Translations under genes and position numbers: made by a program | Part shown: positions 6,187 to 32,339 of the stretch, piece after piece | Layout of the letters: each line of letters begins with the position of its first letter | How positions within the stretch are numbered: position 1 is the stretch's first letter | Virus record (IMG/VR): IMGVR_UViG_3300031957_002643 | Span: 1 to 64,000 of that record | DNA: 64,000 nucleotides | Direction: 5' to 3' (one strand) | The notes under the pieces: generated by a model | Database searches by the model: none | The model's input: only the letters and a program-made list of their open reading frames with translations | Told to the model about the DNA's origin: nothing

Positions 6187-6206
6187 TGTATATGACTCCT
6201 CTGAAA

Positions 6207-6212
6207 TATTTA
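6207..6212 (-). promoter_or_regulatory. putative late promoter (TAAATA)
   Basis: CTAAATA ~20 nt upstream of the baseplate operon; resembles the T4 gp55-dependent TATAAATA. Confidence 0.6.
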
Positions 6213-6288
6213 GCAGTAAATATTGCAGTATTCGTATAACTCACAGGAATATGTCATATGATTCAAGTATCAACCCAAGGATTAACAA

Positions 6289-6858
6289 ATGGAAAAGGAT
6301 GATAACGAACCAAAGCCCGCAGCAAAAGCGCCTGTGAAACCTAAAACAAAAAGAAAGAAGCCTACACATTACATTGTGAATTCTGAAATGCTCGAAGAAG
6401 TCAAAAAGAGCAAAAAGCGATTGGAAGAAAATCCTGAACTTGGTGGTCAAGCATTGACAAAAGAGCTTGCCAGTATGTTTGTCAGGTTGGTCGATCATTA
6501 TGCTACAAAAAAGAATTGGGCAGGCTATTCATACATTGATGAATTGAAAGGCGAAGCCTTGGTCAACTTGGTCAACAAGTGGCACAAGTTTGACAGCGAC
6601 AAATACGACAAGCCCTTCGCATATTATTCCATGTTCGTTGAACGATCATTCAAAGGACAAATTCAAAAAGAGAAGAAGCCACAAAAGGTGAAGGATGCCA
6701 TCATCACCGCTCGTGGCGAAATGCCATCTTACGCGGCTCAAGAAGAGTACGAAAAAGAATGGCAAGAGAAAGTTGCTCAAGACACGGACGCAAGCGAGTC
6801 ATGGGATAACGGTCAGAATGATCGGTTCTACAATAATGAGGACCAAGATGATCAATGA
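6289..6858 (+). CDS. 55: late-transcription sigma factor, T4 gp55-like
   Basis: HYIVNSEML, NWAGYSYIDELKGEA, KFD...KPFAYY; lies upstream of gp47/gp46 as in T4-like phages. Confidence 0.85.
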   Translation: MEKDDNEPKPAAKAPVKPKTKRKKPTHYIVNSEMLEEVKKSKKRLEENPELGGQALTKELASMFVRLVDHYATKKNWAGYSYIDELKGEALVNLVNKWHKFDSDKYDKPFAYYSMFVERSFKGQIQKEKKPQKVKDAIITARGEMPSYAAQEEYEKEWQEKVAQDTDASESWDNGQNDRFYNNEDQDDQ

Positions 6859-7420
6859 TGCTTTCAACCCCCTGCATTTAGAACGGGTTGTTCTCGCTCT
6901 GAGATCATTGCTCAATACGAGTAAACTGGTTCTGACAGAGATTGGAACGTATGATGGCAAGAATGTGGTGATGGGACATACTAAAGGAAACACGGATGTC
7001 CCATTCATCCTGTACTTTAATGGAGAGTATCCAAGCATTTATGCTGGTGAAATTGGCAAGAAAAATTTCCCGGTCAAACGATACACTATTGAGAAAATGC
7101 AATATCCTCCGTTTGATTTCGATGGCACTTTGGTTCGATTTGAATCCTGTTTGCCGGAAACCTTCAAATTGGATGAAACCATGGAAGACATCATGGGGTT
7201 CAAGCCGACATCGAAGTTTGAACAAAAACATTTGAACCGGTGGAAACGAGTTGAAATCACAACGCAAGACTTGCTTTCCAAAGTTGATGAGCTTAAGAAC
7301 CTTTGGTCGTGGACCTATGAAATTCAAATGGACACGGTGTCTGGCATCAATGTCATATACTGTAGATCAGATGCAGACGTAAAGCGCCTGAAAAATGAAA
7401 CAGATGATGACGATCTATGA
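6848..7420 (+). CDS. hypothetical protein
   Basis: Start moved to the ATG (MINDAF) overlapping the gp55 end. Confidence 0.65.
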   Translation: MINDAFNPLHLERVVLALRSLLNTSKLVLTEIGTYDGKNVVMGHTKGNTDVPFILYFNGEYPSIYAGEIGKKNFPVKRYTIEKMQYPPFDFDGTLVRFESCLPETFKLDETMEDIMGFKPTSKFEQKHLNRWKRVEITTQDLLSKVDELKNLWSWTYEIQMDTVSGINVIYCRSDADVKRLKNETDDDDL

Positions 7421-7607
7421 TGCTAAAAATATAGAAGAATTGCTTGAATATCTTGAAAGTATCAATGATCTAATTGGTTCTTTCAAACGTAATGTCAACG
7501 ATAGAATTCTAGAAGAATTGCGTATTATGGAGAATAATGGGTATCGAATTGGTCATATATATATTTTGCAATTCCAAATAATGATAAAAGCAAAAATGAA
7601 GTCATGA
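7395..7607 (+). CDS. hypothetical protein
   Basis: Tiled ORF in operon. Confidence 0.5.
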   Translation: MKQMMTIYDAKNIEELLEYLESINDLIGSFKRNVNDRILEELRIMENNGYRIGHIYILQFQIMIKAKMKS

Positions 7608-7700
7608 TTGATAAATGTGCTGTTGAATACATAAAGCTGCCATGTGGACTTGGTGGATGGATTCTAGGCAACATTCCTAAAAGATCACAAGGATAATACA

Positions 7701-7946
7701 ATGACAGAAGATTTAAAACAAACACGAAAGAATTTGAAGAGCTTGATTGATGTCGCTTATGATATCGAGATCACTTCATCAGACATCGGACTATACGAAT
7801 CCAGTTTCACTATTGACCATTATCGTCAGTCTTTTGATGGTGATGGCAGAATGACCTACGTCTATAAGAAACCCGTTCAATACAGATTGATCGTGGAGAG
7901 CGAAGGTGAAGAAGTCCTGTTCAAAGACATGACCGCTAAAGAATAA
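7701..7946 (+). CDS. hypothetical protein
   Basis: AAGGA RBS; 81 aa. Confidence 0.6.
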   Translation: MTEDLKQTRKNLKSLIDVAYDIEITSSDIGLYESSFTIDHYRQSFDGDGRMTYVYKKPVQYRLIVESEGEEVLFKDMTAKE

Positions 7947-8748
7947 ACAGTTGTCCCTTGGATTCGTTCCATAGTTTATTGCATTGTCTAGAAAACTGTT
8001 GGCCGGATTGTTCAAATAACTTTTTCATTTCTGGTAAATTTTCTCTGATTAATGGTCGATCCCGATATGCGTCAGGGTACAGGAATTTGATCCTTCCATA
8101 TCTCAAAAAGTGAACGAACATTTCCATGATGATTTCACCTTCACGACTAATGTTGTTGTTTTTGAATGAGGTGATATCTACGAAAGGCTGAACGTGAAGA
8201 AGCATATCAAACATAGCTTGGAATAATTGTTGTTTTTCCATCTTGTGCTCAGTCCCCCAATATCCAACATTGATCCCTTGTATGATATGAATCAGAGGAG
8301 CATAAAAGCTTGTCAGGGTAACGGCTTGCGGCATCATTACTGCGTGCACACATCTATGCATAACCATCCATGGTGATAATGGTATCCATTGACTTGCAGT
8401 ATTATTGGTTAGAATGATGTTAATCGCATCTGGGTTCATTACGGATTGAATTTCATCAGCAACGTCTTCCATACCTTCATCACGCATCACTCTTCCGACT
8501 GTGCTATAAATGAAATGCTCTGGCTTCGTGTACTCGTCACGGACATCAAAGGGCAGACTTAGAAAGACGATATTGAGGTCTTTGTGAAATCTTGGAAACA
8601 GGCGTATCATTTTTGCTTTTAATGCTGTATCCTGTACCACTTGTTTGTCCTTGTAGGTCCAAACAGTGTTGTCAAAACCATCTTTTCTAGGCTTGGCATC
8701 CCAATCGCCTTTGATGTGCATGTCTTCGAAAACGTTAAGTAGTTTCAT
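7936..8748 (-). CDS. putative virion-internal protein (MKLLNVFE N-terminus)
   Basis: Lone minus-strand gene with TAAATA at 8770-8775 and a capsid-targeting-like N-terminus. Confidence 0.6.
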   Translation of the reverse strand: MKLLNVFEDMHIKGDWDAKPRKDGFDNTVWTYKDKQVVQDTALKAKMIRLFPRFHKDLNIVFLSLPFDVRDEYTKPEHFIYSTVGRVMRDEGMEDVADEIQSVMNPDAINIILTNNTASQWIPLSPWMVMHRCVHAVMMPQAVTLTSFYAPLIHIIQGINVGYWGTEHKMEKQQLFQAMFDMLLHVQPFVDITSFKNNNISREGEIIMEMFVHFLRYGRIKFLYPDAYRDRPLIRENLPEMKKLFEQSGQQFSRQCNKLWNESKGQLFIL

Positions 8749-8769
8749 GGGTAATCATCCGTATTGTTA

Positions 8770-8775
8770 TATTTA
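8770..8775 (-). promoter_or_regulatory. putative late promoter (TAAATA)
   Basis: TTAAATA 21 nt upstream of ATG 8748. Confidence 0.5.
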
Positions 8776-8793
8776 ATGTGGTAGGAGCATCTT

Positions 8794-9111
8794 ATGTCAT
8801 ATACAAAATTACCGACTGACGATCTTGCAAAAGAGTTCGTAGATGATGTGACTCGTCAGATAGTTTCCGGTAAGAAGAACTTGTCCGATGGTGAAAAGCG
8901 CGAAGTAGATATCAAAATCCAAGGATTGATGCTAACTGCTGAAATAATTCATCATTGTTTCCTTTATGGTATGAGTAAAAACAAAGCACAATTGGAAGAA
9001 ATTCGAAAGATACTAGTCCAAAAACTTATACCACTCGGATACAAAACACCCGAAGGTGATGCATATCAGTATGTTTTGTTGGATCAAATAAATGGATTTG
9101 AATTCAAATGA
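8794..9111 (+). CDS. hypothetical protein (degenerate motif NGFEFK at C-terminus)
   Basis: AGGAG RBS. Confidence 0.7.
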   Translation: MSYTKLPTDDLAKEFVDDVTRQIVSGKKNLSDGEKREVDIKIQGLMLTAEIIHHCFLYGMSKNKAQLEEIRKILVQKLIPLGYKTPEGDAYQYVLLDQINGFEFK

Positions 9112-9371
9112 GTAATCCTTATCAATGTGTCGAAATCCCCCTGTTTGCACCAATGACGGTTGATAATTTGATGGATTGCATTGAATATCACTCGTATTAT
9201 AACTACGAAAAACAACGAATGGATATGACAGACCGGGAACGTTGCAATGATCTAAATGCAATTCGGCATCATATTTTAGATTTGCGAGATTACTGTGGTG
9301 TAAAACAAGGACGCATTGGACCTAGACGGTGGATGAGTGGTATGTCGGAGTTTGAATTCAAATATGACTAA
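9108..9371 (+). CDS. hypothetical protein (degenerate motif SEFEFK)
   Basis: ATGA overlap; resembles next ORF (MTD.ER...LN). Confidence 0.65.
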   Translation: MSNPYQCVEIPLFAPMTVDNLMDCIEYHSYYNYEKQRMDMTDRERCNDLNAIRHHILDLRDYCGVKQGRIGPRRWMSGMSEFEFKYD

Positions 9372-9621
9372 TCAGTTGTTTGAAGATTGCTATTATTCTT
9401 GGCGCTACCATGTTGAATGCCTGAATGATGCAGTGATGACTGATGCTGAGCGCCAGCAGTATGTTCAATCGTTGAACAATAGCTTTAACGTCATGAAGAT
9501 ATTGATTAGTTCGGAATATGGTGACCATGGTGTACGCGCGGGTAAAGTACATCATGACGGATGGCAATATGATTGGCATGTGTTACCGCCAGCGTATGAA
9601 GTGAGACTGAACCATGACTGA
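9364..9621 (+). CDS. LP-motif small protein
   Basis: LPPAYEVR near C-terminus; start adjusted. Confidence 0.65.
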   Translation: MTNQLFEDCYYSWRYHVECLNDAVMTDAERQQYVQSLNNSFNVMKILISSEYGDHGVRAGKVHHDGWQYDWHVLPPAYEVRLNHD

Positions 9622-10048
9622 ACAATACAATTATTTCAAAATACATGCTGATGTTTTTAGTGATTGGTTGGATGATCTGCCAACCGATATGTTGTTCGAT
9701 AATAGAATTAGCGTGCTCGAAGAATTTTTGAATCTATTTTATCCAAAATTGAGTTTCACGTTAACAGAAACCAATATGTATTGGAGTGATGTGACACCGA
9801 ACGGGCGGCAAAAGACGGTGATTCGTGATATCGTCATGAGTCCGAACACATTCGAAATCGTCTCACATCGATATGATTATTTGGAACCAAACGAAAACCC
9901 AATCTCAAAAACGCCTCAACACTACTGCGAATTAGATGATTGGGCCGTGAAGTTGGGGAAATATATGAGAACATTTGGCCAGAAGGTTCCAATTGGGAAT
10001 GTGAAATACAAAATGAAAACACTGATGGGTGCAGGGTATGCAGGATGA
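9614..10048 (+). CDS. hypothetical protein
   Basis: Tiled ORF. Confidence 0.6.
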   Translation: MTEQYNYFKIHADVFSDWLDDLPTDMLFDNRISVLEEFLNLFYPKLSFTLTETNMYWSDVTPNGRQKTVIRDIVMSPNTFEIVSHRYDYLEPNENPISKTPQHYCELDDWAVKLGKYMRTFGQKVPIGNVKYKMKTLMGAGYAG

Positions 10049-10277
10049 GATTGATATTGCCTTGACTTATCTGGCGTCTCGTAAGATTCAATTTGATGAC
10101 ATTCGAAGACGCCGCCTGACAGACAAGAGACGAGTACTTTCATTGCTCGTCCATCACAGGTTGGTCAAGCTACGATATCAGGTCAAAGAATTAGTGGCTT
10201 TGGGTGTTCAAAAGTTCGAATATGATGGTTACCGGTATGAACCCTTACCGGACACATATGAGGTATTAATCTGGTGA
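10038..10277 (+). CDS. LP-motif small protein
   Basis: LPDTYEVL near C-terminus. Confidence 0.6.
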   Translation: MQDEIDIALTYLASRKIQFDDIRRRRLTDKRRVLSLLVHHRLVKLRYQVKELVALGVQKFEYDGYRYEPLPDTYEVLIW

Positions 10278-10558
10278 CGTTTATTGTAATCGATACGGCT
10301 ATTGCGAGTGATGTGGAACTCATCAGTGCTGAGCTTTTGCACTATCTGGACCATCCACCCGGTACTAAATTTTGGTGCCCAGAAATGGTCGATGGGCGCT
10401 TTATTAGCAATATGAAATTGCGGGAGCGTCTTCTGGATGAAGTGTATTCAAAACTCCGCAAATTGTCACATCATGAGATATGTGAGGCTCTTCATATTCT
10501 CAAATCGGCAGGATATGATTATCGGTCACTGCCAGCGGATTACGAGGTGAAATTATAA
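10274..10558 (+). CDS. LP-motif small protein
   Basis: LPADYEVK at C-terminus. Confidence 0.65.
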   Translation: MTFIVIDTAIASDVELISAELLHYLDHPPGTKFWCPEMVDGRFISNMKLRERLLDEVYSKLRKLSHHEICEALHILKSAGYDYRSLPADYEVKL

Positions 10559-11604
10559 TGGCATTATTCAACAAGGTTGCAAGTTTCAGTGATATTCACT
10601 TCGGTGAAGATGGCGACAGCAAATATCACAACGAGCTATGCATCTCGTATATCAAATGGTTTATTGATCAGTGCAAAGAGAATGATGTCGATCTGATTAT
10701 CTTCATGGGCGACTGGCATCATGCGCGTTCGAAGGTTGGATCGGAAACCCTCAAATATTCATACAAGGGAACCAAGCTCCTCAACGAGTGTGGTATTCCA
10801 GTTCTGTTTCTGATCGGCAATCACGATCTCTTCTATCGTGAGAACCGTTCCGTGCACTCATTGCCGTGGCTGTATGAGATGGACAACATCACGGTCATTG
10901 ACGATCCAACTGTCATGGATGATGTTCTTCTGGTCCCATGGCTGGTTGAAAGTGATGACCTCAAACAGATTGCCAATGTCAAAGTGAAATATGCGTTCGG
11001 CCACTTTGAACTTCCCGGCTTCCTCATGAATGAGAAATATGCGTTCCCAGATAAAGAAGGCATTCTCAAGAGTGAAGACATGGACCATCTGGAATACGTG
11101 TTCTCTGGTCACTTCCATGCCCGCCAAAAGAGAACCATGAAGTCCGGCTGTGAAATTCATTATATTGGAAACCCGTTCCCTCATGATTTTAATGATGTGA
11201 ATGACCGGGAACGTGGCATGATGATTCTTGAATACGACAACAAACCACAATATATCAATTGGCCGGATGCTCCGTACTACGAGAAGCTAACACTTTCTCA
11301 ACTGTTGGAACAGCCAGAAAAGTTTGATAATAATTCTCACATTAAGGTCATCCAAGATGTTGAGATGACTTCGACTGAGAAGGACGAATTGCGCCAAACT
11401 TTGTTGGAGAATTTTGGTATCGTTCATGTGAGTATTGAACCAGATCGCACCAAAGACAAAGATGGTAACCAAATCGTCAGCGAAGATGATGAAGTCTCGG
11501 ATATCGAGAATGTGGAATTGTATGTGGTGAATTGGATTACCGAGAACGAAGCCACGCGCAAAGATCGAATGATTGAACTCTTTACCAAAGCACAAGCCAT
11601 ATGA
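10558..11604 (+). CDS. 47: recombination endonuclease subunit gp47 (Mre11/SbcD-like)
   Basis: SDIHFG, MGDWHH, IGNHD, GHFE, FSGHFH phosphoesterase motifs. Confidence 0.92.
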   Translation: MALFNKVASFSDIHFGEDGDSKYHNELCISYIKWFIDQCKENDVDLIIFMGDWHHARSKVGSETLKYSYKGTKLLNECGIPVLFLIGNHDLFYRENRSVHSLPWLYEMDNITVIDDPTVMDDVLLVPWLVESDDLKQIANVKVKYAFGHFELPGFLMNEKYAFPDKEGILKSEDMDHLEYVFSGHFHARQKRTMKSGCEIHYIGNPFPHDFNDVNDRERGMMILEYDNKPQYINWPDAPYYEKLTLSQLLEQPEKFDNNSHIKVIQDVEMTSTEKDELRQTLLENFGIVHVSIEPDRTKDKDGNQIVSEDDEVSDIENVELYVVNWITENEATRKDRMIELFTKAQAI

Positions 11605-11843
11605 TTCGCGATACCATCATAGCGGAACGATTTGATCCGATTGCACGTAAGCTTCTTGTGTCACATGCACACGAACTATCATCGAGAGAAGTTGATGGCT
11701 TGGAAGCAGTAAAAGATTTGTGCTCGCCCGAAATCCGCAGCCGTGTTGTTCGAAAGCTAAAACTTCATAATCTTGGAAGAACATCCGCTTCATTTAATTA
11801 TGTATCAAAAAGATATTTGCGGGGAATATTAAATGCTTCGTGA
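11601..11843 (+). CDS. hypothetical protein (MIRDTI N-terminus)
   Basis: ATGA overlap with gp47. Confidence 0.6.
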   Translation: MIRDTIIAERFDPIARKLLVSHAHELSSREVDGLEAVKDLCSPEIRSRVVRKLKLHNLGRTSASFNYVSKRYLRGILNAS

Positions 11844-11988
11844 TATCATATACAAAACTGCCCGAAATGAATTATACGGGTTACAATGTAGCAACATAGT
11901 GCTTTTGCCCATAATAAAGCGCACACTAGAAGAAACAAAAAGCATTTTACGTGCTATTGAGAATGGAAATCGCACCAATGCTTCGTGA
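11833..11988 (+). CDS. hypothetical 51-aa protein (MLRDII), not in the ORF track
   Basis: Hand translation MLRDIIYKTARNELYG...NRTNAS*; fills the gap exactly. Confidence 0.55.
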   Translation: MLRDIIYKTARNELYGLQCSNIVLLPIIKRTLEETKSILRAIENGNRTNAS

Positions 11989-12181
11989 TCTGATTTTCAA
12001 CCAAGTGGTTTGTAGTACCTATGGGGATGTTCCGTTAGAAACCACATGTTGTGTTTTGAGTTCTTCAAGTGGATTTTTACATAATCATGCAATAAGAAAA
12101 ATAAAACAAGCTGAAGAGCGAAGAAACAGATTGGAGGCGATTAAACGACAAATCGCAAAGAGACAATTATGCCTACTTTAG
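11978..12181 (+). CDS. hypothetical protein (MLRDLI)
   Basis: Start adjusted to the overlapping ATG. Confidence 0.55.
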   Translation: MLRDLIFNQVVCSTYGDVPLETTCCVLSSSSGFLHNHAIRKIKQAEERRNRLEAIKRQIAKRQLCLL

Positions 12182-12438
12182 TGCCCGCACTGGCGGATAG
12201 CTGGCTTCAAGCCGTGAGTAACTTGATTGATGATGTACACATGAATGCTCCAAAGACATTATTAGACCTGCTGCATAAGCGATATGGCACAAATAACCTG
12301 TTGGACCGCTTGAAAGATCATAAAGAAGAGCGTATTATGATGGCTCGGATTTATTACAACATGGGCGTTACACCTTATGGAACACGATTTTACAAACTTC
12401 CCAGAGATTACGCAATCAAGTTTAGAGATGCTTATTAA
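12169..12438 (+). CDS. LP-motif small protein
   Basis: LPRDYAIK. Confidence 0.6.
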   Translation: MPTLVPALADSWLQAVSNLIDDVHMNAPKTLLDLLHKRYGTNNLLDRLKDHKEERIMMARIYYNMGVTPYGTRFYKLPRDYAIKFRDAY

Positions 12439-12673
12439 TGATGTTTCGGAATACCATCGTCTTCCCTCTGGCTTCGTCTTCAAGCCTATCATCGAAGACG
12501 AATATGGTGTGCTACCCGTAGAATATTTGATGATTGACGACAACGGGACTTTGTGGTCTATTACGCCATCAGATGAAGAGTTTGAGTACTGGAACCAAGT
12601 CGTATTTGAAGGCCATTCGCCTGATGAGATACGACAGTTGGGTATGGCATTGATGAAAGAGGTACTTGGGTGA
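12428..12673 (+). CDS. LP-motif small protein
   Basis: LPSGFVFK. Confidence 0.6.
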   Translation: MLINDVSEYHRLPSGFVFKPIIEDEYGVLPVEYLMIDDNGTLWSITPSDEEFEYWNQVVFEGHSPDEIRQLGMALMKEVLG

Positions 12674-13002
12674 TGCACGGCAGTTATGAATACGAATTGA
12701 TCGAACCCGATGATGCTGTTCCATTTTTTGACCCGAAATCGCTGAAATTCAGCAATGTCATGATCGTCAACAACGAAACGATAAACATGATTGCGGAAAC
12801 CGCTGACGTTGGTGAACTGAAACAACTACCGCCTGTGTTTGATTTCAAAGTCGATGACAAACCGGGCATTAGACTCACCGTGTTGGATGGCGATAAAATC
12901 CAACACTTTTATTTGTCCATATGGAGAGCGTGTGGAAGTCAACCGAGTGCATTGCCTATCTATGCACCAAAACTAATGGAACGTATAGGGGAATACCTAT
13001 GA
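12670..13002 (+). CDS. LP-motif small protein
   Basis: LPPVFDFK. Confidence 0.6.
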   Translation: MMHGSYEYELIEPDDAVPFFDPKSLKFSNVMIVNNETINMIAETADVGELKQLPPVFDFKVDDKPGIRLTVLDGDKIQHFYLSIWRACGSQPSALPIYAPKLMERIGEYL

Positions 13003-13316
13003 GTGAAACTGATCTGGTTGCCAAAGAAAAGTATGGCAAGACAATCATTGAATGGAACTTCACTACAGGTGAAGTGACATCTCGTTTGTACAGTGAAGTC
13101 AAGAAAACATTCGAGAAGCCAAGCACGGTCACTCGAACAAAAAACATTATGTCTGATCTTCGTAAGCCGGGGGATGATTACTTTGTCCTTCCAACGGGAT
13201 TTGAACTCAAGCTCAATCCGGCACTACCGAGATTCCTTGATCTAGAACAAGATGTCGCAGTGTTTCCAGCCGATGACGAATATAAAAGACGCTTTGCACA
13301 AATTGCCACGGATTGA
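12999..13316 (+). CDS. LP-motif small protein
   Basis: LPTGFELK. Confidence 0.6.
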   Translation: MSETDLVAKEKYGKTIIEWNFTTGEVTSRLYSEVKKTFEKPSTVTRTKNIMSDLRKPGDDYFVLPTGFELKLNPALPRFLDLEQDVAVFPADDEYKRRFAQIATD

Positions 13317-13617
13317 CTACGTTTGCTCTGTTCATTATGATCATGTGGATGTTATAATTGATACATCCTCACACAATGAGCAATCATACGAGCAAATAGA
13401 AGTTCAAGGTGGTATAATATGGCAACCACTGCAAGATATGGTCTCACTGCCAGATAGTTTTGAAATCACTGGTCTGAGTATCGGTGGTGATTATGATAAC
13501 ATAAATTTTAATAATATTTATGTTGAAAATGATGTCAAAATGTATATTCTTTGCGGTAAATTAAAGGATGACTTATTCAACAAAAAAGGTAAAATACAAA
13601 GCGAGGAAAACGCTTGA
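13273..13617 (+). CDS. LP-motif small protein
   Basis: LPDSFEIT. Confidence 0.55.
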   Translation: MTNIKDALHKLPRIDYVCSVHYDHVDVIIDTSSHNEQSYEQIEVQGGIIWQPLQDMVSLPDSFEITGLSIGGDYDNINFNNIYVENDVKMYILCGKLKDDLFNKKGKIQSEENA

Positions 13618-13933
13618 TGTGGGCGCTTTCTATTGTCCATACATCCCGCTTGATATGCCTATTATTCGTACATTTCTATTTCCTCTGCCCCATTGGAGAG
13701 GCAACGGCTCTTTTCACACAAAAAAGATTGAGCTAGGAACGGTTCATGATAAATGCTTGGTGGAACCAACTGCCGAGTGCGATGTCTTCCAATTGGTAAG
13801 CCTTCCAAAAGACTTTACTTTCAAACCAGTTTTCAATACAGTGCATCTGACTATTCCGATTGGTAACGGTAAGATCAAGAAGATTTGCCACGGGTCGGAT
13901 GAATTCAAGGATGAGTTGAAAAAACGGCTATGA
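13568..13933 (+). CDS. LP-motif small protein carrying a major-capsid C-terminal-like peptide
   Basis: LPKDFTFK; DVGAFYCPYIPL. Confidence 0.6.
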   Translation: MTYSTKKVKYKARKTLDVGAFYCPYIPLDMPIIRTFLFPLPHWRGNGSFHTKKIELGTVHDKCLVEPTAECDVFQLVSLPKDFTFKPVFNTVHLTIPIGNGKIKKICHGSDEFKDELKKRL

Positions 13934-14286
13934 GATTGTCTTCTCGCATACGATACATGATCGGCTTTGCCGAAGATCAATTGGCTACGTGGAAGCCACG
14001 ATTGCCCGTCCTCAATGGCAAGATTGTACAAAACAATAGCAATGGAACTGTAGCCGTTAGAGAGAAAAACAAATATGGTAAACGTCCCAAACTCGATGGC
14101 TTGCTAAGTTTTGTTGATACGCGATTTGGCACAGGCGAAATTCACTCATTGCCTGATTCGTTTTGCTTCAAACCCAAACAAAATAAACATGAACTGATTC
14201 GAATTCCGATCCATTCAACACGTGACGATGATAAGTTTCTTGGCTTTCTGACATTGACCCCGCGTTGGATCAAAGAGAACTCGTAA
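13930..14286 (+). CDS. LP-motif small protein
   Basis: LPDSFCFK; C-terminal GFLTLTPRWI shared with next ORF. Confidence 0.6.
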   Translation: MRLSSRIRYMIGFAEDQLATWKPRLPVLNGKIVQNNSNGTVAVREKNKYGKRPKLDGLLSFVDTRFGTGEIHSLPDSFCFKPKQNKHELIRIPIHSTRDDDKFLGFLTLTPRWIKENS

Positions 14287-14684
14287 TGGGTCTTGCTGCA
14301 AAGATACGTGAACGGGTTGAACAAATTCAAGCCGATATCAACTTATTACATTCTGATGCCCTTCAGGCTTATTCAGGACGCCAACAATCCCATATAATCC
14401 GCAAAAGACTTCCGCGTAAGTTGCGTGTTATTAAAATCCATCACAAGTGGAATGGTTATATTGATATTATTCATAATATCTGTGAGGATTGGTTTAAAAA
14501 TATAGAAACTGGCAAGTACTACAAGGTCAAAGAATATTTTGATACATCCGATAAAAAGGAAGTGACAGTCTTACCAAATAGTTTTGAATTCAAAATCACA
14601 CACAACTCAAAACATGCGTTCAAGACGCACATCGAGGGGTATGGATTTCTGACTTTTACCTATAAGTGGCTTAGAAACAATTAA
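14286..14684 (+). CDS. LP-motif small protein
   Basis: LPNSFEFK; GFLTFTYKWL. Confidence 0.6.
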   Translation: MGLAAKIRERVEQIQADINLLHSDALQAYSGRQQSHIIRKRLPRKLRVIKIHHKWNGYIDIIHNICEDWFKNIETGKYYKVKEYFDTSDKKEVTVLPNSFEFKITHNSKHAFKTHIEGYGFLTFTYKWLRNN

Positions 14685-14726
14685 TAATTTGTCCTATGAT
14701 GTGAGCATATTATTCATGAGGTTCTT

Positions 14727-15335
14727 ATGCTCTATCTATTCCGTCATGGTGAAAGCCTGACCAACATCAAACTCGATGAAGTTTGCAACTTTCCACTTAA
14801 TGACGACAATACGGTTCTGACCACACAAGGAATGATGCACGCCATGGACGTGGGCATGCGTTTGAAAGATCAAGGCGTAAGACCTGACATCATTTTCACA
14901 TCACCATTAGCCAGAGCACGACAAACCTCATATATTTTGGCATCATCCATGGAGCACGGATGTCCCATCGAAGTGATCGATGATCTCCATGAAATCGTCT
15001 GGCACAAGAATGGTGTCTTCGAGCGCCACGAGAATTACAGAGACATTGATGGGTGTTTCAAAACGGTAGACGAAAGACCATTGCCGGGTCTAGAAAATCA
15101 ACGAGACGTTTACAACCGTGTCGTCAGCCACATTCCAAAACTCATCACCGAAGCATTGTCCGGCAAAACTGTTTTCTGCGTCTCTCACTATTTTGTCATC
15201 AGAGCGATTAGAGCCTATCTGGATCATAACGATGTTGAATTCATGCCACACTATGACCCAAAGAATGTTGATCCAGTAATCTACACCGAAGCATTACTTG
15301 GCAGTCTATCAACCACCAAAATGTCGGCACTATGA
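14727..15335 (+). CDS. histidine phosphatase (phosphoglycerate mutase family)
   Basis: LFRHGES, SPLARARQT, VSH motifs. Confidence 0.9.
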   Translation: MLYLFRHGESLTNIKLDEVCNFPLNDDNTVLTTQGMMHAMDVGMRLKDQGVRPDIIFTSPLARARQTSYILASSMEHGCPIEVIDDLHEIVWHKNGVFERHENYRDIDGCFKTVDERPLPGLENQRDVYNRVVSHIPKLITEALSGKTVFCVSHYFVIRAIRAYLDHNDVEFMPHYDPKNVDPVIYTEALLGSLSTTKMSAL

Positions 15336-15721
15336 ATGCAATGAGTATCATCCCAGAAGATATAATAAACGAATGGGCCATCGAAGCCGCCAAACAGGTT
15401 CCATACACACATGAACCACTTCCAACTGAAGGGTTCTGTTTCAAATGGTCACCAAAACAACTTAAAGGAGTATTTCTTAGCTACTTCTATGAAATCTCAC
15501 AGTTTTTAGACGATGATGATTACAAGCGCTTATTTTACAATGATATAAAGGTTGCTCAAACGTATTATGATAGCCCTAAAATCCACAAAATGGGACCAGC
15601 GGGTATAATTAAGATGGAGAGTGATACTGGTGCATGCGCCGTATGCGTGTATGCGAATGCCGTGTGTGAAAGAACTGATTTAGATGAAACACTTTATGAC
15701 TGCGAAGGTTCAAGTAGTTGA
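15332..15721 (+). CDS. LP-motif small protein
   Basis: LPTEGFCFK (one-residue insertion). Confidence 0.6.
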   Translation: MNAMSIIPEDIINEWAIEAAKQVPYTHEPLPTEGFCFKWSPKQLKGVFLSYFYEISQFLDDDDYKRLFYNDIKVAQTYYDSPKIHKMGPAGIIKMESDTGACAVCVYANAVCERTDLDETLYDCEGSSS

Positions 15722-16106
15722 TCACGAGATTGATGCTCTAACTGATGTAGAAACGGATGAACACAAGGTTCATTATTACTACAAACCAATCAGTAATGCT
15801 AAAAAGGGAATTCTAGATGATTCTGAAGCAGAAAGCGTTGTCTTCTATCTATTCTACAAGAAATTCAGAGAAGGCAAAAAGCTTCCTTCTGGTTTTGAAG
15901 TCAAAATCCCAGAACAGCATATAGAAAACAAGTTCATCCCAACGGATAGCGCCTACAATTATGGCGAAGGGCGTTCATTTGCGGAATGGGGCATCTGTTA
16001 TCCTGTAGCTAATATCCATCTCGTTGATGGTACCTACATTGATGAAGACGGAGATGAAATCTACGATTACTTCGTGCAGTTTGACTTGGTGGTGAATGGT
16101 TTATGA
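15684..16106 (+). CDS. LP-motif small protein
   Basis: LPSGFEVK. Confidence 0.6.
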   Translation: MKHFMTAKVQVVDHEIDALTDVETDEHKVHYYYKPISNAKKGILDDSEAESVVFYLFYKKFREGKKLPSGFEVKIPEQHIENKFIPTDSAYNYGEGRSFAEWGICYPVANIHLVDGTYIDEDGDEIYDYFVQFDLVVNGL

Positions 16107-16450
16107 TTCACTACAAATCGAAGGGACATTCTCTCCCCTCTGAGTATGAGATAGAAATCTCTGGATCACCAGACGTTGGTGTTTTCAGATGTTTGACGCA
16201 TTCGTATATTGAACCTGATAAAAAGGATGACGTAAACTATCATCAATTTATTGGAAGACGATTAGTTACGAGTTTCCAAAAGAAATTCCCAAATTACATT
16301 TATTATCTTCATCTTAGTCCGCCAGCAGTAAGCGTGTTGAGCGAGGATGAAACAAAATGCTCAATAGCCTTCAAAGTTTTTGCCTTGGTTGCCAATGGGC
16401 CAAATGATATATCTGATACGCCCTTCATTAGTTATTGGAAAATAGAATGA
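16103..16450 (+). CDS. LP-motif small protein
   Basis: LPSEYEIE. Confidence 0.6.
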   Translation: MIHYKSKGHSLPSEYEIEISGSPDVGVFRCLTHSYIEPDKKDDVNYHQFIGRRLVTSFQKKFPNYIYYLHLSPPAVSVLSEDETKCSIAFKVFALVANGPNDISDTPFISYWKIE

Positions 16451-16740
16451 ATTTACCATCCACATTCGAATTCAAAATACATCCACGGGCCGAAAGCAAG
16501 ATTCAAGTCCATCATGTCAAAGAACCATTGATCGGGTCATCAGAAGACATCATTAATGCCATTCATGATGGCTATTCCCGTGGATATCGGTATCAGTATT
16601 CCACTTCGAACGTGACCGTATTGTCCTATGATGTTCATCTATCAGAACCCATGTCATATGTTGATACTGAAACCTTTGAAGTCAAACAAGTGTGGGGAAT
16701 GGTTGGAACCGTGACAATGTTAGTCTCATATATGCCATGA
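16447..16740 (+). CDS. LP-motif small protein
   Basis: LPSTFEFK at N-terminus; paralog of next ORF. Confidence 0.6.
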   Translation: MNLPSTFEFKIHPRAESKIQVHHVKEPLIGSSEDIINAIHDGYSRGYRYQYSTSNVTVLSYDVHLSEPMSYVDTETFEVKQVWGMVGTVTMLVSYMP

Positions 16741-17036
16741 CCAAACAACTTCCATCGGAATTCGAATTCAAAATAGACTATGATGTGGACGTTATTATTG
16801 ACGTTCGCAAATGTGGTCCGTGGATACTAACGGTTGCAGAGATATTAGAAGAAATGTTACTTCAATACCAAAATTACTATTCTAAAAGACACAAGATTAC
16901 TTCATCACGAATTGTAAGCCACACTCTGTATAAAACTCCCACACCAGTAGAAGTACTAGATGAGATCACATTCTCGCCAAAAATGATCATGGGCGTTCTT
17001 GGTGATGTCACAATTAAAACGATGGTTAGAAAATGA
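16737..17036 (+). CDS. LP-motif small protein
   Basis: LPSEFEFK at N-terminus. Confidence 0.6.
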   Translation: MTKQLPSEFEFKIDYDVDVIIDVRKCGPWILTVAEILEEMLLQYQNYYSKRHKITSSRIVSHTLYKTPTPVEVLDEITFSPKMIMGVLGDVTIKTMVRK

Positions 17037-17452
17037 GCAACGATAAAACGCAACTGGAAGCAATCTCATTTTATGATGATTGTGTTTCCGTTCATTCGGA
17101 ATGGAGCAATGCTCATATTGATTTCACTGATCTAAAAACACATGACGAATTGAATTGGTCTGCGCTTCCCTCCGACTATGAATTCAAATTGAGTGGATCA
17201 TTGGCTAGACGCCAGTATCATGAATATCTCTACATCGCTGACGATAAAGATTTCGTATCAATCCTTAGTAAAACCATCGAGGATATGATCGCGGTGTTGG
17301 GTCAGAACCATATTTCATTTGATGCTAAATTCATCAATGTGGAAAATGAAAACTATGATTACATCGATATCAAGGTCACATATTATCGCCCACCCCATAG
17401 AAATTTCACCCGTGCCTTGTCGGGTGTCGTACAAAAACATACATCTTCCTAA
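17033..17452 (+). CDS. LP-motif small protein
   Basis: LPSDYEFK. Confidence 0.6.
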   Translation: MSNDKTQLEAISFYDDCVSVHSEWSNAHIDFTDLKTHDELNWSALPSDYEFKLSGSLARRQYHEYLYIADDKDFVSILSKTIEDMIAVLGQNHISFDAKFINVENENYDYIDIKVTYYRPPHRNFTRALSGVVQKHTSS

Positions 17453-17473
17453 CAAAACTCATATGATGGTGTC

Positions 17474-19624
17474 ATGCTGAACTTAGGACTTCTGACAATT
17501 CAGAATTTGAAATCGTTTGGGAATAAGCGTTCCCAAATTCGATTGGATGACCATACTGGTCTAACACTCATCATGGGATCGAATAAAGATTCCCCCGACG
17601 AGGAATCGCGCAATGGCTGTGGTAAGTCTACCATCTTTGATGCCTTGGCATTCGTCCTGACTGGCAAGCCGATCAAGAATGCCAATCCACCATCCGCATT
17701 GGTCAATCGTGCCAATGAAAAGAAAATGTTGGTGGAACTTGATTTCGAATTGAATGGTTTCGAATGCCGTATCATTCGTGGCCTCAAGCCGGGCGTGTGC
17801 CGTTTCTACAAGAAACCAAAGAATGCTCCCGGCGAATTGATCGACTTTGATTGCACCAAGGATTCCATTGCGAATACCTCGAACGATATCATTGCGTTCA
17901 CCGGTATCGATAATGAGATTTTCAAACTGGTTCTTGTCACTGCTGCCAAACAGGAGAACTTTTTCTCGTTGGATGCTGCCAAGCAGCGCAATGTGATCGA
18001 AATCCTATTCGGTTCGACCATCCTTTCAGTCAAAGCTGAAGTTCTCAAAGAGATGCGGAAGCAGCGCGAAACTGATCTTGCTCTGGAAAAGGCAAAGATC
18101 ACTGAACGCATTGCACAACAGGAACGCGACAAGCGCCGCCTAGAGGCGTTAGAGGCCCGATGCACACAATGGACCGAACAACACGAAGCGTCCATCCTAG
18201 AGCATCAGGAACAGATTAAGGCACTGTCTGAGATTGATTTCGAAGAACAAGAGTCAATTTGGCGCGACAAGTCCGAATATGACAAGCAGCATTCCGAACT
18301 GAAGAGACAGCTTGAGACTGCACAAAAGGATGTGGCCAGTTTCGAGGCACAAGTCAAACTCCCAACGATGAACAAGTTGAGAGCTGCGGAAGCAAAGGTT
18401 GTTGAACTCAAAGGTATCGATATCGAGGATTTCATCAAACGATATGAAACCTATGAGAATACCAAGACTGAAATTGATGCGACCAAAAAGGATTTGCAAA
18501 CCGAGATCAAACTTCTCAACAGCAATTTGAACCAATTCAATACTGATCTTAAGACCTTGCGCAAACAGCTCGAAGGGTTTACAGATGAGTGTCCGACCTG
18601 TGGGCAACCATGGCCCGATGCTGAAGCTCGTCAAAAACAGATTGACGAACTCAACAAGCAGATTGGTGCGAAGGAAGCAGAACGAGAAGAAGCCAATGCT
18701 GAGATTGAAAAAACACAATTCGATCTTGGCGAACTGGATTTGATCAAGAATGAAAAGCCTACTGAATTCGCCAACCGTGATCTGGCTCTTAGAGCATCTA
18801 CTGATCTTGATAATGCACGTGCCATGGTTAAGACGCTTCGCGCTGAACTTGCTGATGCGGAAGCTAAAGAAGATGCCTTGGAAGCAACGCTTACGCTTGC
18901 TAAAAACAATCTGGCAGACTTCGAAAAATCCTCTGATCCGACAGCGGGTAAAGATTTACTTGTTGACAGCTTGGAAGAACTCAAAGTTCTACAAACAGAA
19001 CTTCGAGAATATGAAAAGCGCCTATCCCAACTACTAGTCGAAGAGAATCCACATACGGCCAGCTATGATGAATTGAAGGCTGAGATTTCCGATGAAGTCG
19101 ATAACTCTGCTGTCATCGAGATCGAAGAAGACATTCAAACGCACACCGATCTGATTAATCTTTTGACTAAAAAGGATTCACCAATCCGTAAAGACATTGC
19201 AGCAACCAAGCTGCCAGCGCTGAACAAGTTCATTGCTGAATATCTGGATGCCCTGAACCTTCCATACATCGTGAAGATCAATGATGATCTAACACCATCC
19301 ATTTATGACTTCGAAAAGGATGGCAACTTCACAACCGTATCTTCTGGTGAAGAGGAACGTATCGCTATGGCATTGTCATGGGCGTTCCGTGACTTGTTTG
19401 AATACATGAACTATCCGATCAACTTCTTCGGTATCGATGAACGCATTGATGCCGGTCTGGATGGTTCTGGTTCCAGTCGTGCAATCGATATTCTCTATGA
19501 GATGGCCACCAATAGAAAGCGTAATATTTTCTTGATCTCACATAAGCAAGAAATGATTGACTATGTGGATAGAGTTATGCTATTGGTTAAAGAGAATGGT
19601 TTTTCTAGAATTGAGATGGCGTAA
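17474..19624 (+). CDS. 46: recombination endonuclease subunit gp46 (Rad50/SbcC-like ATPase)
   Basis: NGCGKST Walker A, coiled coil with CPTC zinc hook, SSGE signature, IDE...GLD Walker B, ISH. Confidence 0.93.
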   Translation: MLNLGLLTIQNLKSFGNKRSQIRLDDHTGLTLIMGSNKDSPDEESRNGCGKSTIFDALAFVLTGKPIKNANPPSALVNRANEKKMLVELDFELNGFECRIIRGLKPGVCRFYKKPKNAPGELIDFDCTKDSIANTSNDIIAFTGIDNEIFKLVLVTAAKQENFFSLDAAKQRNVIEILFGSTILSVKAEVLKEMRKQRETDLALEKAKITERIAQQERDKRRLEALEARCTQWTEQHEASILEHQEQIKALSEIDFEEQESIWRDKSEYDKQHSELKRQLETAQKDVASFEAQVKLPTMNKLRAAEAKVVELKGIDIEDFIKRYETYENTKTEIDATKKDLQTEIKLLNSNLNQFNTDLKTLRKQLEGFTDECPTCGQPWPDAEARQKQIDELNKQIGAKEAEREEANAEIEKTQFDLGELDLIKNEKPTEFANRDLALRASTDLDNARAMVKTLRAELADAEAKEDALEATLTLAKNNLADFEKSSDPTAGKDLLVDSLEELKVLQTELREYEKRLSQLLVEENPHTASYDELKAEISDEVDNSAVIEIEEDIQTHTDLINLLTKKDSPIRKDIAATKLPALNKFIAEYLDALNLPYIVKINDDLTPSIYDFEKDGNFTTVSSGEEERIAMALSWAFRDLFEYMNYPINFFGIDERIDAGLDGSGSSRAIDILYEMATNRKRNIFLISHKQEMIDYVDRVMLLVKENGFSRIEMA

Positions 19625-19989
19625 TGGGTTATTGGCCTTGGTACTTCGTTCCTTTTATTCTGTGGTTGCTTTTTGTATCAGCCGCCCACCCGCTTCATAA
19701 TGCGAGTAAACGGGAAAAGGTATTTTGGTTCTTTGGACATGTGTACGCCTGTATTGCTGCCATCGCATGTCTCGTGGTTGGTATAAGAGGCATCGCATAT
19801 CACGAATCACTGGCTCGGGCAGAACAGGCAGCACAAGTAGAAATGGCCAATGATCCTGATGTCATGCAGGAAGTTCTGGAAGAGCGCATTCAACGCCAAC
19901 AAGAATTTCATGCAGAGATCGAAGCACTTCGTCGTCAAATTGAAGAGATGCGCGCAGAACGAGAAGCAAGAGAAGCAGACCAACCATGA
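19624..19989 (+). CDS. membrane protein (2 TM plus coiled coil)
   Basis: Two hydrophobic segments and a charged helical tail. Confidence 0.65.
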   Translation: MGYWPWYFVPFILWLLFVSAAHPLHNASKREKVFWFFGHVYACIAAIACLVVGIRGIAYHESLARAEQAAQVEMANDPDVMQEVLEERIQRQQEFHAEIEALRRQIEEMRAEREAREADQP

Positions 19990-20171
19990 TAGACTTACCT
20001 GACTGGATTTATTGGGCATTGGTCGTGCTTGACAATCTGTGGTTCGTCTATGTTGTTTATTATCTCAACAACTGGAAAGATGATAAACAGGGATGTGTAG
20101 TGATAGTCATCTTTTTAATCGTCAAATCCATTAGTCTCTTTGCAACCCTTAAGCTTTTGGAAAACGCCTGA
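19986..20171 (+). CDS. small membrane protein
   Basis: Two hydrophobic segments. Confidence 0.55.
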   Translation: MIDLPDWIYWALVVLDNLWFVYVVYYLNNWKDDKQGCVVIVIFLIVKSISLFATLKLLENA

Positions 20172-20314
20172 TGTTGACGCTACTCAAGATGTATACCATT
20201 ACGCCCGTGGTTGAATTCACAACTAAGGTTGGATATCCGCTACTTGCGGTTCTAACTATGATTGCTACGTTTGATGCGATCATGTTATTTGTAATTTTGG
20301 AGAATATGAAATGA
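20171..20314 (+). CDS. small membrane protein (47 aa, not in the ORF track)
   Basis: MLTLLKMY...YPLLAVLTMIATFDAIMLFVILENMK*; tiles the gap. Confidence 0.45.
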   Translation: MLTLLKMYTITPVVEFTTKVGYPLLAVLTMIATFDAIMLFVILENMK

Positions 20315-22577: not shown

Positions 22578-22585
22578 AACGTCCT

Positions 22586-26223: not shown

Positions 26224-26228
26224 TACTA

Positions 26229-32316: not shown

Positions 32317-32333
32317 GATATGCCTTCCGGTCA

Positions 32334-32339
32334 TAAATA
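32334..32339 (+). promoter_or_regulatory. putative late promoter (TAAATA), 5 nt before ATG
   Basis: CATAAATAtcgggATG at the boundary between two arrays. Confidence 0.65.

What the first reader, a model, noticed from the sequence alone, without database searches (positions are those of the whole stretch)
8794..17452. A floating short linear motif LPxx[FY]x[FIVL]K in 17 otherwise dissimilar small proteins around gp47/gp46
Seen once per ORF: LPPAYEVR, LPDTYEVL, LPADYEVK, LPRDYAIK, LPSGFVFK, LPPVFDFK, LPTGFELK, LPDSFEIT, LPKDFTFK, LPDSFCFK, LPNSFEFK, LPTEGFCFK, LPSGFEVK, LPSEYEIE, LPSTFEFK, LPSEFEFK, LPSDYEFK, plus degenerate GFEFK and SEFEFK in 8794 and 9108. The motif sits C-terminally, centrally or N-terminally and is encoded by varied codons, so selection appears to act on the peptide. 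I did not see it in the other two arrays. Inference: a beta-strand-addition docking tag that recruits many cargo proteins to one hub (a phage complex, a sorting or import factor, or a host protein).
Basis: partly seen in the sequence, partly recalled or inferred. Interest (0 to 1): 0.86.

Follow-up and report, generated by a model that had tools for sequence, protein, structure and literature searches.

The report
Shared peptide motif in phage gene array
Nineteen tiny, fast-evolving genes of unknown function packed around the Mre11/Rad50-like genes of an uncultivated giant phage all keep one short peptide (LPxxFEFK-like), which is real and selected at the protein level, but whether it is a docking tag for a common partner or just the last surviving core of a duplicated gene family could not be settled.

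Summary
All 17 listed motifs and the 2 degenerate ones are present, one per ORF, on the + strand. There are 12 strict and 16 loose matches against 0.019 and 0.23 expected from shuffles. No strict match lies in any real ORF elsewhere in the 64 kb. All six Leu and all four Pro codons are used, so selection acts on the peptide.

The carriers are 19 of 23 co-oriented, overlapping small ORFs flanking gp47 and preceding gp46 in a 335-kb T4-superfamily jumbo phage. They have no Pfam, PHROG, PDB or phage homologues, and none in 1.8–5.8 billion proteins outside this clade.

The motif is C-terminal in the first six ORFs, central in the next seven and N-terminal in the last six. Profile comparison aligns only the motif. 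However, four pairs share flank homology, motif variants track neighbours, and an obvious paralogue array nearby is almost as undetectable.

A sister phage carries five variant motifs in the same interval, with a basic instead of an acidic residue at position 6 (P=3e-4).

Best reading: a tandemly amplified, fast-diverging ORFan family whose only constrained element is a turn plus an amphipathic β-strand, probably a shared interaction strand. The docking-hub idea remains untested. Both AlphaFold models were poor.

The parts
8794..9111 (+). C-type small ORF (105 aa); degenerate motif GFEFK at the C-terminus (nt 9094-9108)
9108..9371 (+). C-type small ORF (87 aa); degenerate motif EFEFK near the C-terminus (nt 9348-9362)
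9364..9621 (+). C-type small ORF (85 aa by the JGI gene call); LPPAYEVR at nt 9583-9606
9614..10048 (+). 144-aa ORF inside the array without a canonical motif (only LPTDMLFD near the N-terminus)
10038..10277 (+). C-type small ORF (79 aa); LPDTYEVL at nt 10245-10268
10274..10558 (+). C-type small ORF (94 aa); LPADYEVK at nt 10529-10552, one residue before the stop
10558..11604 (+). gp47-like Mre11-type nuclease (Metallophos). A landmark, not a motif carrier
12169..12438 (+). C-type small ORF (89 aa); LPRDYAIK at nt 12397-12420
12377..12673 (+). M-type small ORF (98 aa); LPSGFVFK at nt 12461-12484
12673..13002 (+). M-type small ORF (109 aa); LPPVFDFK at nt 12826-12849
12999..13316 (+). M-type small ORF (105 aa); LPTGFELK at nt 13188-13211
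13273..13617 (+). M-type small ORF (114 aa); LPDSFEIT at nt 13447-13470
13619..13933 (+). M-type small ORF (104 aa); LPKDFTFK at nt 13802-13825
13930..14286 (+). M-type small ORF (118 aa); LPDSFCFK at nt 14149-14172. AlphaFold model of low confidence
14286..14684 (+). M-type small ORF (132 aa); LPNSFEFK at nt 14571-14594
14727..15335 (+). Histidine-phosphatase-superfamily gene that interrupts the array. It is conserved next to gp47 in relatives that lack the array, so it is not a motif carrier
15332..15721 (+). N-type ORF (129 aa); LPTEGFCFK with a three-residue spacer at nt 15419-15445. Its orthologue in L002 (13973-14383) has LTEPFRIK
15696..16106 (+). N-type ORF (136 aa); LPSGFEVK at nt 15882-15905
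16103..16450 (+). N-type ORF (115 aa); LPSEYEIE at nt 16133-16156 (residues 11-18)
16447..16740 (+). N-type ORF (97 aa); LPSTFEFK at nt 16453-16476 (residues 3-10)
16737..17036 (+). N-type ORF (99 aa); LPSEFEFK at nt 16749-16772 (residues 5-12). AlphaFold model of low confidence
17033..17452 (+). N-type ORF (139 aa); LPSDYEFK at nt 17165-17188
17474..19624 (+). gp46-like Rad50/SbcC-type ATPase. A landmark that closes the array

Best explanation
The region holds a clade-restricted, tandemly amplified and very fast-evolving family of small ORFan genes in a 335-kb T4-superfamily jumbo phage. It splits into three local sub-groups, with the motif C-terminal, central or N-terminal.

The only element held constant by selection is a signature of about 12 residues, [DE]-h-x-x-L-P-x-x-[FY]-E-[FV]-K-h. 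It reads as a Leu-Pro turn followed by a five-residue amphipathic beta-strand: F5, F7 and h9 lie on one face, E6 and K8 on the other.

Either flank can be absent. C-type proteins end at the strand and N-type proteins begin with it. I therefore infer that the strand itself carries the conserved function. Most likely it is a beta-sheet pairing surface, used with a common partner or between family members, while the variable flanks supply different activities or specificities.

The genes are probably dispensable accessory genes, for host take-over or counter-defence, co-transcribed with the gp47/gp46 recombination genes.

Shown: the motif is real, it is selected as a peptide, its position varies, the genes have orphan status and a tandem arrangement, they evolve fast, and the sister phage carries a variant motif.

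Inferred: the beta-strand conformation, common descent of all three sub-groups, an interaction function, and the accessory or early role.
For: Enrichment:
- 12 strict matches against 0.019 expected, and no strict match elsewhere in the window.
- Synonymous codon diversity.

Structure of the motif:
- Alternating hydrophobic/charged pattern with a hydrophobic residue at +9. The related peptide FEFEFKFK is a known self-assembling beta-sheet former (PMC4221980).
- Only the 13-20 motif columns align between the three groups. With the motif removed, nothing aligns.

Tandem family character:
- 19 of 23 co-oriented, overlapping ORFs of 79-144 aa, with motif-to-motif spacing mostly 244-460 nt.
- Four pairs with flank homology, two of them adjacent genes.
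- Sub-variants track neighbours: YEV in C-type, F5 in all M-type, LPS in 5 of 6 N-type.
- A neighbouring, obviously paralogous array shows the same loss of pairwise similarity, with 9 of 120 pairs at E<0.01.

Fast evolution:
- The orthologous pair 15332 / L002:13973 is 22% identical, while gp47 is 73% and gp46 is 56%. The motif block is the best-conserved stretch of that pair.

Orphan status:
-.

Sister phage L002:
- 5 relaxed motifs in about 579 aa of small ORFs between gp47 and gp46, against 0.087 expected (P=4e-8).
- A basic residue at position 6 in 4 of 5 members, against 14 acidic and 0 basic of 19 in the window (Fisher P=3e-4).
Against: - No partner was identified and no complex could be modelled.
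- Both AlphaFold2 models were poor (mean pLDDT 56.6 and 46.0). They left the motif unstructured at pLDDT 40-55, so the beta-strand assignment rests on the sequence pattern alone. Foldseek found nothing.
- Common descent of the three sub-groups is not demonstrated, because flanks do not align even within groups.
- The charge switch in L002 rests on five motifs found with a pattern relaxed after inspection. It could also reflect lineage-specific expansion from different founders rather than co-evolution with a partner.
- Only 64 kb plus about 15 kb of the 335-kb genome was examined.
- Expression timing is unknown. The promoter scan was uninformative.
Confidence: 0.5

Rival explanations
1. Pure structural relic. 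All members descend from one small domain by tandem duplication, with truncations or extensions at either end. The motif is only the folding nucleus, a beta-turn-strand packing into each protein's own core. There is no common partner.
For: - Tandem, co-oriented genes of similar size.
- Residual flank homology in four pairs.
- Motif variants cluster by neighbourhood.
- The motif lies in aromatic-rich, beta-prone context rather than in low-complexity linkers.
- Array 2 shows that paralogues in this phage erode to short conserved signatures.
Against: - The strand is terminal with nothing after it in C-type proteins, and nothing before it in three N-type proteins. It would therefore have to pair with different neighbours in different members.
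- The two residues on the polar face of the amphipathic pattern (E6, K8) are conserved in proteins with pI from 4.1 to 10.1.
- The charge at position 6 differs between the two phages in several members at once.
- No flank similarity appears between groups, although that test has low power.
Confidence: 0.3
2. A true floating short linear motif in the reader's sense. Unrelated proteins acquired or retained a portable docking tag that recruits them all to a single hub, either a phage complex such as gp46/gp47 or a host protein, by beta-strand addition.
For: - Only the motif aligns between groups.
- Position independence.
- Peptide-level selection.
- A charge switch at position 6 in several members of the sister phage at once.
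- The array brackets gp47 and abuts gp46. Eukaryotic Mre11 is bound by Nbs1 through a short NFKxFxK peptide (PMC7260605). This is an analogy only, because the spacing differs.
Against: - No hub is known.
- The carriers look like one duplicated family rather than unrelated proteins.
- The context is not visibly disordered.
- The motif is missing from more distant relatives that keep gp46/gp47, so it is not required for gp46/gp47 function.
- Adjacency to gp46/gp47 may be incidental, since small accessory genes commonly fill gaps between core genes in T4-like phages (own knowledge).
Confidence: 0.12
3. The motif is a processing or modification site, for example a phage protease cleavage site or the target of a modifying enzyme acting on the conserved Lys or Glu.
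For: - Invariant LP and an aromatic residue, with conserved E and K.
- Head proteases of T4-like and phiKZ-like phages cleave after Glu in short motifs (own knowledge).
Against: - Glu at position 6 is present in only 14 of 19 members and is replaced by Arg or Lys in L002. A Glu-specific protease would need it to be invariant.
- Cleavage at a C-terminal motif would remove only 1-5 residues, and at an N-terminal one only about 10.
- The genes sit among replication and recombination genes, not head genes.
Confidence: 0.05
4. The conserved element is really a DNA or RNA signal (promoter, recombination site or RNA structure), and it only appears as a peptide by translation.
For: The motif recurs at intervals of roughly 250-460 nt.
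Against: - Six Leu and four Pro codons are used, third positions are near-random, and information is concentrated at codon positions 1 and 2.
- The motif lies in all three + frames.
- There is no excess of promoter-like sites.
Confidence: 0.01

Closest known systems
Tandem multigene (paralogue) arrays of jumbo phages, such as array 2 of this same window (22.1-32.3 kb)
   Same: Co-oriented, tightly packed ORFs of roughly 80-140 aa. They are ORFans that have diverged beyond pairwise detection, keeping only a short conserved signature.
   Different: Array 2 is colinear: its signature sits at fixed N- and C-termini and its members are of equal length. In the LP array the signature moves from the C-terminus to the centre to the N-terminus, and the flanks are not alignable even as profiles.
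Hub-docking short linear motifs, such as sliding-clamp-binding motifs of bacterial and phage replication proteins or the Nbs1 NFKxFxK peptide on Mre11
   Same: A short peptide with invariant hydrophobic anchors, shared by proteins that otherwise do not align. It could pair with a partner as an extended strand. The array also lies next to an Mre11/Rad50 pair (PMC7260605).
   Different: The sequence and spacing differ. Known motifs sit in flexible tails or linkers, whereas here the context looks ordered. No hub is known, and the carriers are probably paralogues.
T4 capsid-targeting sequence of internal proteins
   Same: A short shared peptide on otherwise unrelated small phage proteins that directs them to one assembly (own knowledge).
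   Different: The capsid-targeting sequence is strictly N-terminal and is removed by the head protease after a Leu/Ile-x-Glu site. Here the position varies, Glu is not invariant, and the genes are not in a head module.
Motif-marked effector families of pathogens (RxLR, PEXEL, MIX-type markers)
   Same: Rapidly diversifying, locally amplified gene families in which only a short motif is conserved (own knowledge).
   Different: Those motifs have a fixed N-terminal position and a known role in export or translocation. Neither has been shown here.
Ionic-complementary beta-sheet peptides (FEFEFKFK)
   Same: The core F-E-F-K has the same alternating aromatic/charged pattern, which forms antiparallel beta-sheets (PMC4221980).
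   Different: Those are synthetic repeats of eight residues. Here there is a single four- to five-residue strand inside natural proteins, and the sister phage's F-R-V-K variant is not self-complementary.

Membership tests
Short linear motif (ELM sense) | Short (3-12 residues) with a few fixed positions | tested here: met
   L1, P2, [FY]5 and h7 are invariant in 16 of 16 canonical copies. E6 is present in 11 of 16 and K8 in 12 of 16.
Short linear motif (ELM sense) | Lies in an intrinsically disordered or flexible region | tested here: inconclusive
   The flanks are aromatic-rich and beta-prone. AlphaFold gives pLDDT 40-55 at the motif, but the whole models are poor.
Short linear motif (ELM sense) | Occurs in evolutionarily unrelated proteins | tested here: inconclusive
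   Flanks do not align between groups. However, the test has low power, and the tandem arrangement plus four homologous pairs suggest paralogy.
Short linear motif (ELM sense) | Binds a defined globular partner | not testable with these tools
   No multimer prediction or experiment was available.
Tandem paralogue family | Adjacent, co-oriented genes of similar length | tested here: met
   19 motif ORFs of 79-139 aa, all on the + strand, mostly overlapping by a few bases.
Tandem paralogue family | Detectable homology along the whole length among members | tested here: inconclusive
   Only 4 pairs reach E<0.01. Within-group flank profiles do not align. The control array 2 is also barely detectable.
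Tandem paralogue family | Conserved signature at a colinear position | tested here: not met
   The relative position of the motif ranges from 0.07 to 0.96 of protein length.
T4 capsid-targeting sequence | N-terminal location followed by a Leu/Ile-x-Glu protease site | tested here: not met
   The motif is C-terminal or central in 13 of 19 members. Glu is not invariant and there is no Leu/Ile at -2.
Sliding-clamp-binding motif | QL[SD]LF-type or T4 LDFL-type consensus (own knowledge) | tested here: not met
   The sequences read LPxx[FY]E[FV]K. The gp55-like protein's C-terminus does not carry the motif.
Any curated protein family (Pfam, PHROG, PDB sequence) | Significant profile match | tested here: not met
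   No hit reached a curated cut-off. The best PDB sequence hit had E 0.0099, with no stretch significant on its own.

The most novel reading that the evidence does not exclude
The LPxx[FY]E[FV]K strand is a portable docking tag through which about 19 different small phage proteins compete for, or are recruited to, one hub by beta-strand addition. The tag co-evolves with that hub, acidic at position 6 in this phage and basic in its sister. The hub could be the adjacent gp47/gp46 Mre11-Rad50 machine, by analogy with the Nbs1 peptide on Mre11, or a host protein. This would be a client/hub motif system in a bacteriophage of a kind I have not seen described.
Probability: 0.2. Interest if true: 0.85.

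Novelty: new variant of a known kind. Interest (0 to 1): 0.5.

Why it matters
Giant phages carry many arrays of orphan genes whose function is unknown. This array gives an unusually clean handle on one of them. A single 8-12-residue element survives divergence so extreme that orthologues are 22% identical, and it survives regardless of where it sits in the protein.

If the element is an interaction strand, mutating two residues would switch off a whole family at once, and the partner could be fished out with a peptide. That would show how a phage uses a battery of variable proteins on one target.

If it is only a folding nucleus, it would still be an example of how little of a protein needs to stay constant in phage gene families.

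Tried and rejected
- **Nucleotide-level element:** rejected by codon diversity.
- **Chance:** rejected by shuffles and by the inside/outside and strand controls.
- **Known families:** Pfam, PHROGs and PDB sequence profiles found nothing.
- **Homologue searches:** all returned only the input sequences or nothing. These were word-indexed searches of 5.8 billion proteins for all three groups, exhaustive HMMER of the N-type profile against 1.84 billion representatives, and megablast and tblastn against 50,697 phage genomes.
- **Structure:** the AlphaFold2 models of 16737-17036 and 13930-14286, built on paralogue alignments, had mean pLDDT 56.6 and 46.0. The Foldseek PDB search had no hit at E<=0.001.
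- **One domain, permuted or truncated:** hhalign on the flanks with the motif removed found nothing. The positive control on array 2 was also weak, so this remains open.
- **More relatives:** gp46 and gp47 scans found only one informative sister contig (L002) and a short one (L023).
- **Head-protease site, clamp-binding motif, capsid-targeting sequence and ribbon-helix-helix N-terminal strand:** considered and rejected on consensus and position.
- **Promoters and terminators:** sigma-70 and T4-late promoter scans gave no timing information.
- **Wasted look-ups:** four encoding-contig runs returned nothing because I gave wrong gene boundaries.

Full report
**Source and context**

The window is the first 64 kb of IMGVR_UViG_3300031957_002643, a 335,552-bp uncultivated phage contig. 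Five public contigs carry the region, one of them a rotated copy of the same 335,552-bp length.

The gp46-like Rad50/SbcC ATPase (17474-19624) is at most about 30% identical to any sequenced phage. Its best hits are jumbo phages of 310-385 kb, including Salmonella SE_PL and Munch, Escherichia PBECO4 and G17, Pectobacterium CBB and Xanthomonas XacN1. Megablast of the flagged region against 50,697 phage genomes finds nothing.

Other landmarks:
- gp47-like Mre11 nuclease at 10558-11604, and a histidine-phosphatase gene at 14727-15335.
- A Cpn10 gene at 20311-20598.
- Baseplate genes upstream of the window, and baseplate and portal genes downstream.

**Check of the observation**

So are the two degenerate C-terminal copies, GFEFK and EFEFK.

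- The strict pattern LPxx[FY]x[FIVL]K occurs 12 times in the 2,478 residues of small ORFs in the region. Residue shuffling gives 0.019 on average and never more than 2 in 20,000 trials. The loose pattern occurs 16 times against 0.23.
- In ORFs of at least 60 aa outside the region (about 39,000 residues, both strands) there is no strict match and there are five loose matches. The reverse strand inside the region has none. The only strict six-frame match elsewhere contains a stop codon.
- The other two arrays of the window (22-32 kb and 32-38 kb) therefore lack the motif.
- About 15 kb beyond both window ends also lacks it.
- The codons are diverse: six Leu codons and four Pro codons are used, and third positions carry almost no information. 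The constraint is on the peptide.

**Anatomy of the motif**

Anchoring the sequences on the aromatic residue shows a longer signature:
- an acidic residue at -4 and a hydrophobic or aromatic residue at -3, where an upstream sequence exists;
- invariant Leu-Pro, then two variable residues;
- Phe or Tyr, Glu (11 of 16), Phe/Val/Ile/Leu, Lys (12 of 16);
- then usually Ile, Leu or Pro.

Positions 5, 7 and 9 are hydrophobic and positions 6 and 8 are charged. This is the pattern of an amphipathic beta-strand that begins after a Leu-Pro turn. The assignment is an inference from the sequence. The related synthetic peptide FEFEFKFK is a known beta-sheet former (PMC4221980).

**Anatomy of the array**

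Using the JGI gene calls for boundaries, 19 of the 23 small ORFs between 8794 and 17452 carry the motif. The exceptions are a 144-aa ORF at 9614-10048 and three short ORFs just after gp47.

Position follows gene order:
- C-terminal in the six carriers from 8794 to 12438. In 10274-10558 the motif ends one residue before the stop.
- Central in the seven carriers from 12377 to 14684.
- N-terminal or near it in the six carriers from 15332 to 17452. The motif starts at residues 3, 5 and 11 in three of them.

The spacing between neighbouring motifs within each run of carriers is mostly 244-460 nt in all three sections. Protein pI ranges from 4.1 to 10.1.

**Are the carriers related to each other?**

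Profile-profile comparison of the three positional groups aligns only the 13-20 motif columns. With the motif cut out, no pair of flank sets aligns (all P>=0.2). Even random halves of one group do not align.

Three things argue that the genes are nevertheless a duplicated family:
1. Four pairs keep homology beyond the motif at BLASTP E<0.01: 16435/16692 over 90 residues, 13930/14265, 12377/13568 and 12921/15332. Two of these pairs are adjacent genes.
2. Motif sub-variants track the neighbourhood. C-type has Tyr-Glu-Val, all seven central members have Phe at position 5, and five of six N-type members have Leu-Pro-Ser.
3. The negative result has little power. Array 2 of the same window is an obvious colinear paralogue family of about 25 ORFs, yet it has only 9 of 120 pairs at E<0.01. 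Split into two sets of six, it gives hhalign E-values of only 3e-4 to 0.18.

Evolution is extremely fast. The one clear orthologous pair with the sister phage (15332-15721 and L002:13973-14383) is 22% identical, while gp47 is 73% and gp46 is 56%. The motif block is the best-conserved stretch of that alignment.

**Distribution**

None of the proteins matches Pfam, PHROGs or PDB sequences.
- Word-indexed profile searches of 5.8 billion proteins for each group returned only proteins of this contig and of L002.
- An exhaustive HMMER search of the N-type profile against 1.84 billion representatives returned only its own eight input sequences.
- Among 29 related loci fetched through gp47, only the closest relatives (gp47 at least 71% identical) have any motif copies. 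Relatives at 50% or less have none.
- In one of those distant relatives (L024, gp47 45%), gp47, the histidine phosphatase and gp46 sit close together with a single 381-aa gene and no array between them. The array is therefore an insertion and expansion specific to a narrow clade, and it is not needed for gp46/gp47 function.

**The sister phage**

In L002 the interval between gp47 and gp46 holds about six small ORFs. Five of them carry a relaxed form of the motif: LPDEFRVK, MPASFRIR, LPVRMKVK, LTEPFRIK and LPESFIIQ. The same pattern's background rate predicts 0.087 (P=4e-8). I relaxed the pattern after looking at the sequences, so this P value is optimistic.

Position 6 is basic in four of the five L002 motifs. 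In the window it is acidic in 14 of 19 and never basic (Fisher P=3e-4). A simultaneous charge change in several paralogues is what co-evolution with one partner would produce. It would also arise if each phage expanded its array from a different founder. The single proven orthologous pair (Cys in the window, Arg in L002) does not decide between these.

**Structure prediction**

Two AlphaFold2 runs on paralogue alignments gave mean pLDDT of 56.6 (16737-17036) and 46.0 (13930-14286).
- In both models the motif was unstructured at pLDDT 40-55.
- With alignments this shallow, the result says little either way. Foldseek against the PDB gave no hit at E<=0.001.

**Interpretation**

The most economical account is a tandemly amplified, fast-diverging ORFan family whose single constrained element is the turn-plus-strand.

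Because C-type proteins end with the strand and several N-type proteins start with it, neither flank is necessary for whatever keeps the strand constant. The strand must also pair with different intramolecular neighbours, or none, in different members. Add the conserved charged face in proteins of very different pI and the charge switch in the sister phage. On that basis I favour an interaction role, meaning beta-sheet pairing with a common partner or between members, over a purely structural relic. The margin is modest (0.5 against 0.3).

The position next to an Mre11/Rad50 pair recalls the Nbs1 NFKxFxK peptide that binds Mre11 (PMC7260605). However, the spacing differs and distant relatives manage without the array, so this is only a lead.

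A protease-site reading fails because Glu is not invariant and becomes Arg or Lys in L002. A nucleic-acid signal is excluded by the codon diversity.

**Verdict**

The family is new and orphan. The mechanism is unresolved with the tools available here. I rate the finding as moderately interesting: a well-defined, experimentally tractable signature in giant-phage dark matter, but without a function or a partner.

Noticed in passing
window 22143-32316: Array 2: about 25 co-oriented ORFs of roughly 120 aa. They share a conserved N-terminus M-[IL]-x-[DN]-x-[IL] and a conserved C-terminus [EF]-[FY]-x-x-Y-[FHY]. Only 9 of 120 pairs reach BLASTP E<0.01, so paralogues in this phage erode to terminal signatures.
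   Followed up: partly
window 32306-39414: Array 3: about eight ORFs of 230-270 aa, most starting MRLR/MKSL-x-I-V-E. They are followed by two ORFs (38264-38806 and 38803-39414) with repeated H-R-L-D-G-P-A units that resemble MORN-type repeats. No Pfam hit for 33715-34527.
   Followed up: no
window 11601-12181: Three short ORFs directly after gp47 begin with, or contain, MIRD/MLRD, which is the N-terminal signature of array 2. They look like fragments of that family lying inside the LP array.
   Followed up: no
window 6848-7420; L002 9064-9639; L023 8712-9293; L024 9358-9993: A conserved protein of about 190 aa next to the gp55-like gene starts MINDAF (array-2-like) and has LPETFKLD in mid-protein. 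This is conserved as LPDVFTVK and LPNKFQLK in close relatives, and a 211-aa ORF at the same position in the distant relative L024 has YPETFKIF. It is probably part of that protein's own fold, but it could be related to the motif.
   Followed up: partly
L024 9127-9357: In a distant relative that lacks the array, a 76-aa ORF between the gp55-like gene and the 211-aa ORF begins MAELLPSEFDEIY. This is an N-terminal LPSEF reminiscent of the N-type motif. It scored only 2.4 bits with the motif HMM.
   Followed up: no
window 6000-20000: Terminator-like hairpins are about twice as frequent as in shuffles (20 against 8.4, sd 2.9), many of them on the - strand.
   Followed up: no
L034 5402-6628 (about 4-5 kb beyond the window's 3' end): An IS605 OrfB/TnpB-type (Cas12f-like) gene sits in the phage genome between a T4-type baseplate gene and accessory genes. 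Portal and baseplate genes follow.
   Followed up: no
window 43497-44525 (-), 48386-49570 (-), 57756-58709 (+), 60787-61560 (+): Auxiliary metabolism and repair genes: an IMPDH/GMP-reductase-like gene, an RNA ligase, thymidylate synthase and a second metallophosphoesterase. DHFR, an acetyltransferase and a class-II tRNA-synthetase-like gene lie nearby.
   Followed up: no
window 7936-8748 (-): A 270-aa ORF on the opposite strand, with no family match, sits just upstream of the array. It is absent from the corresponding position in L002.
   Followed up: no
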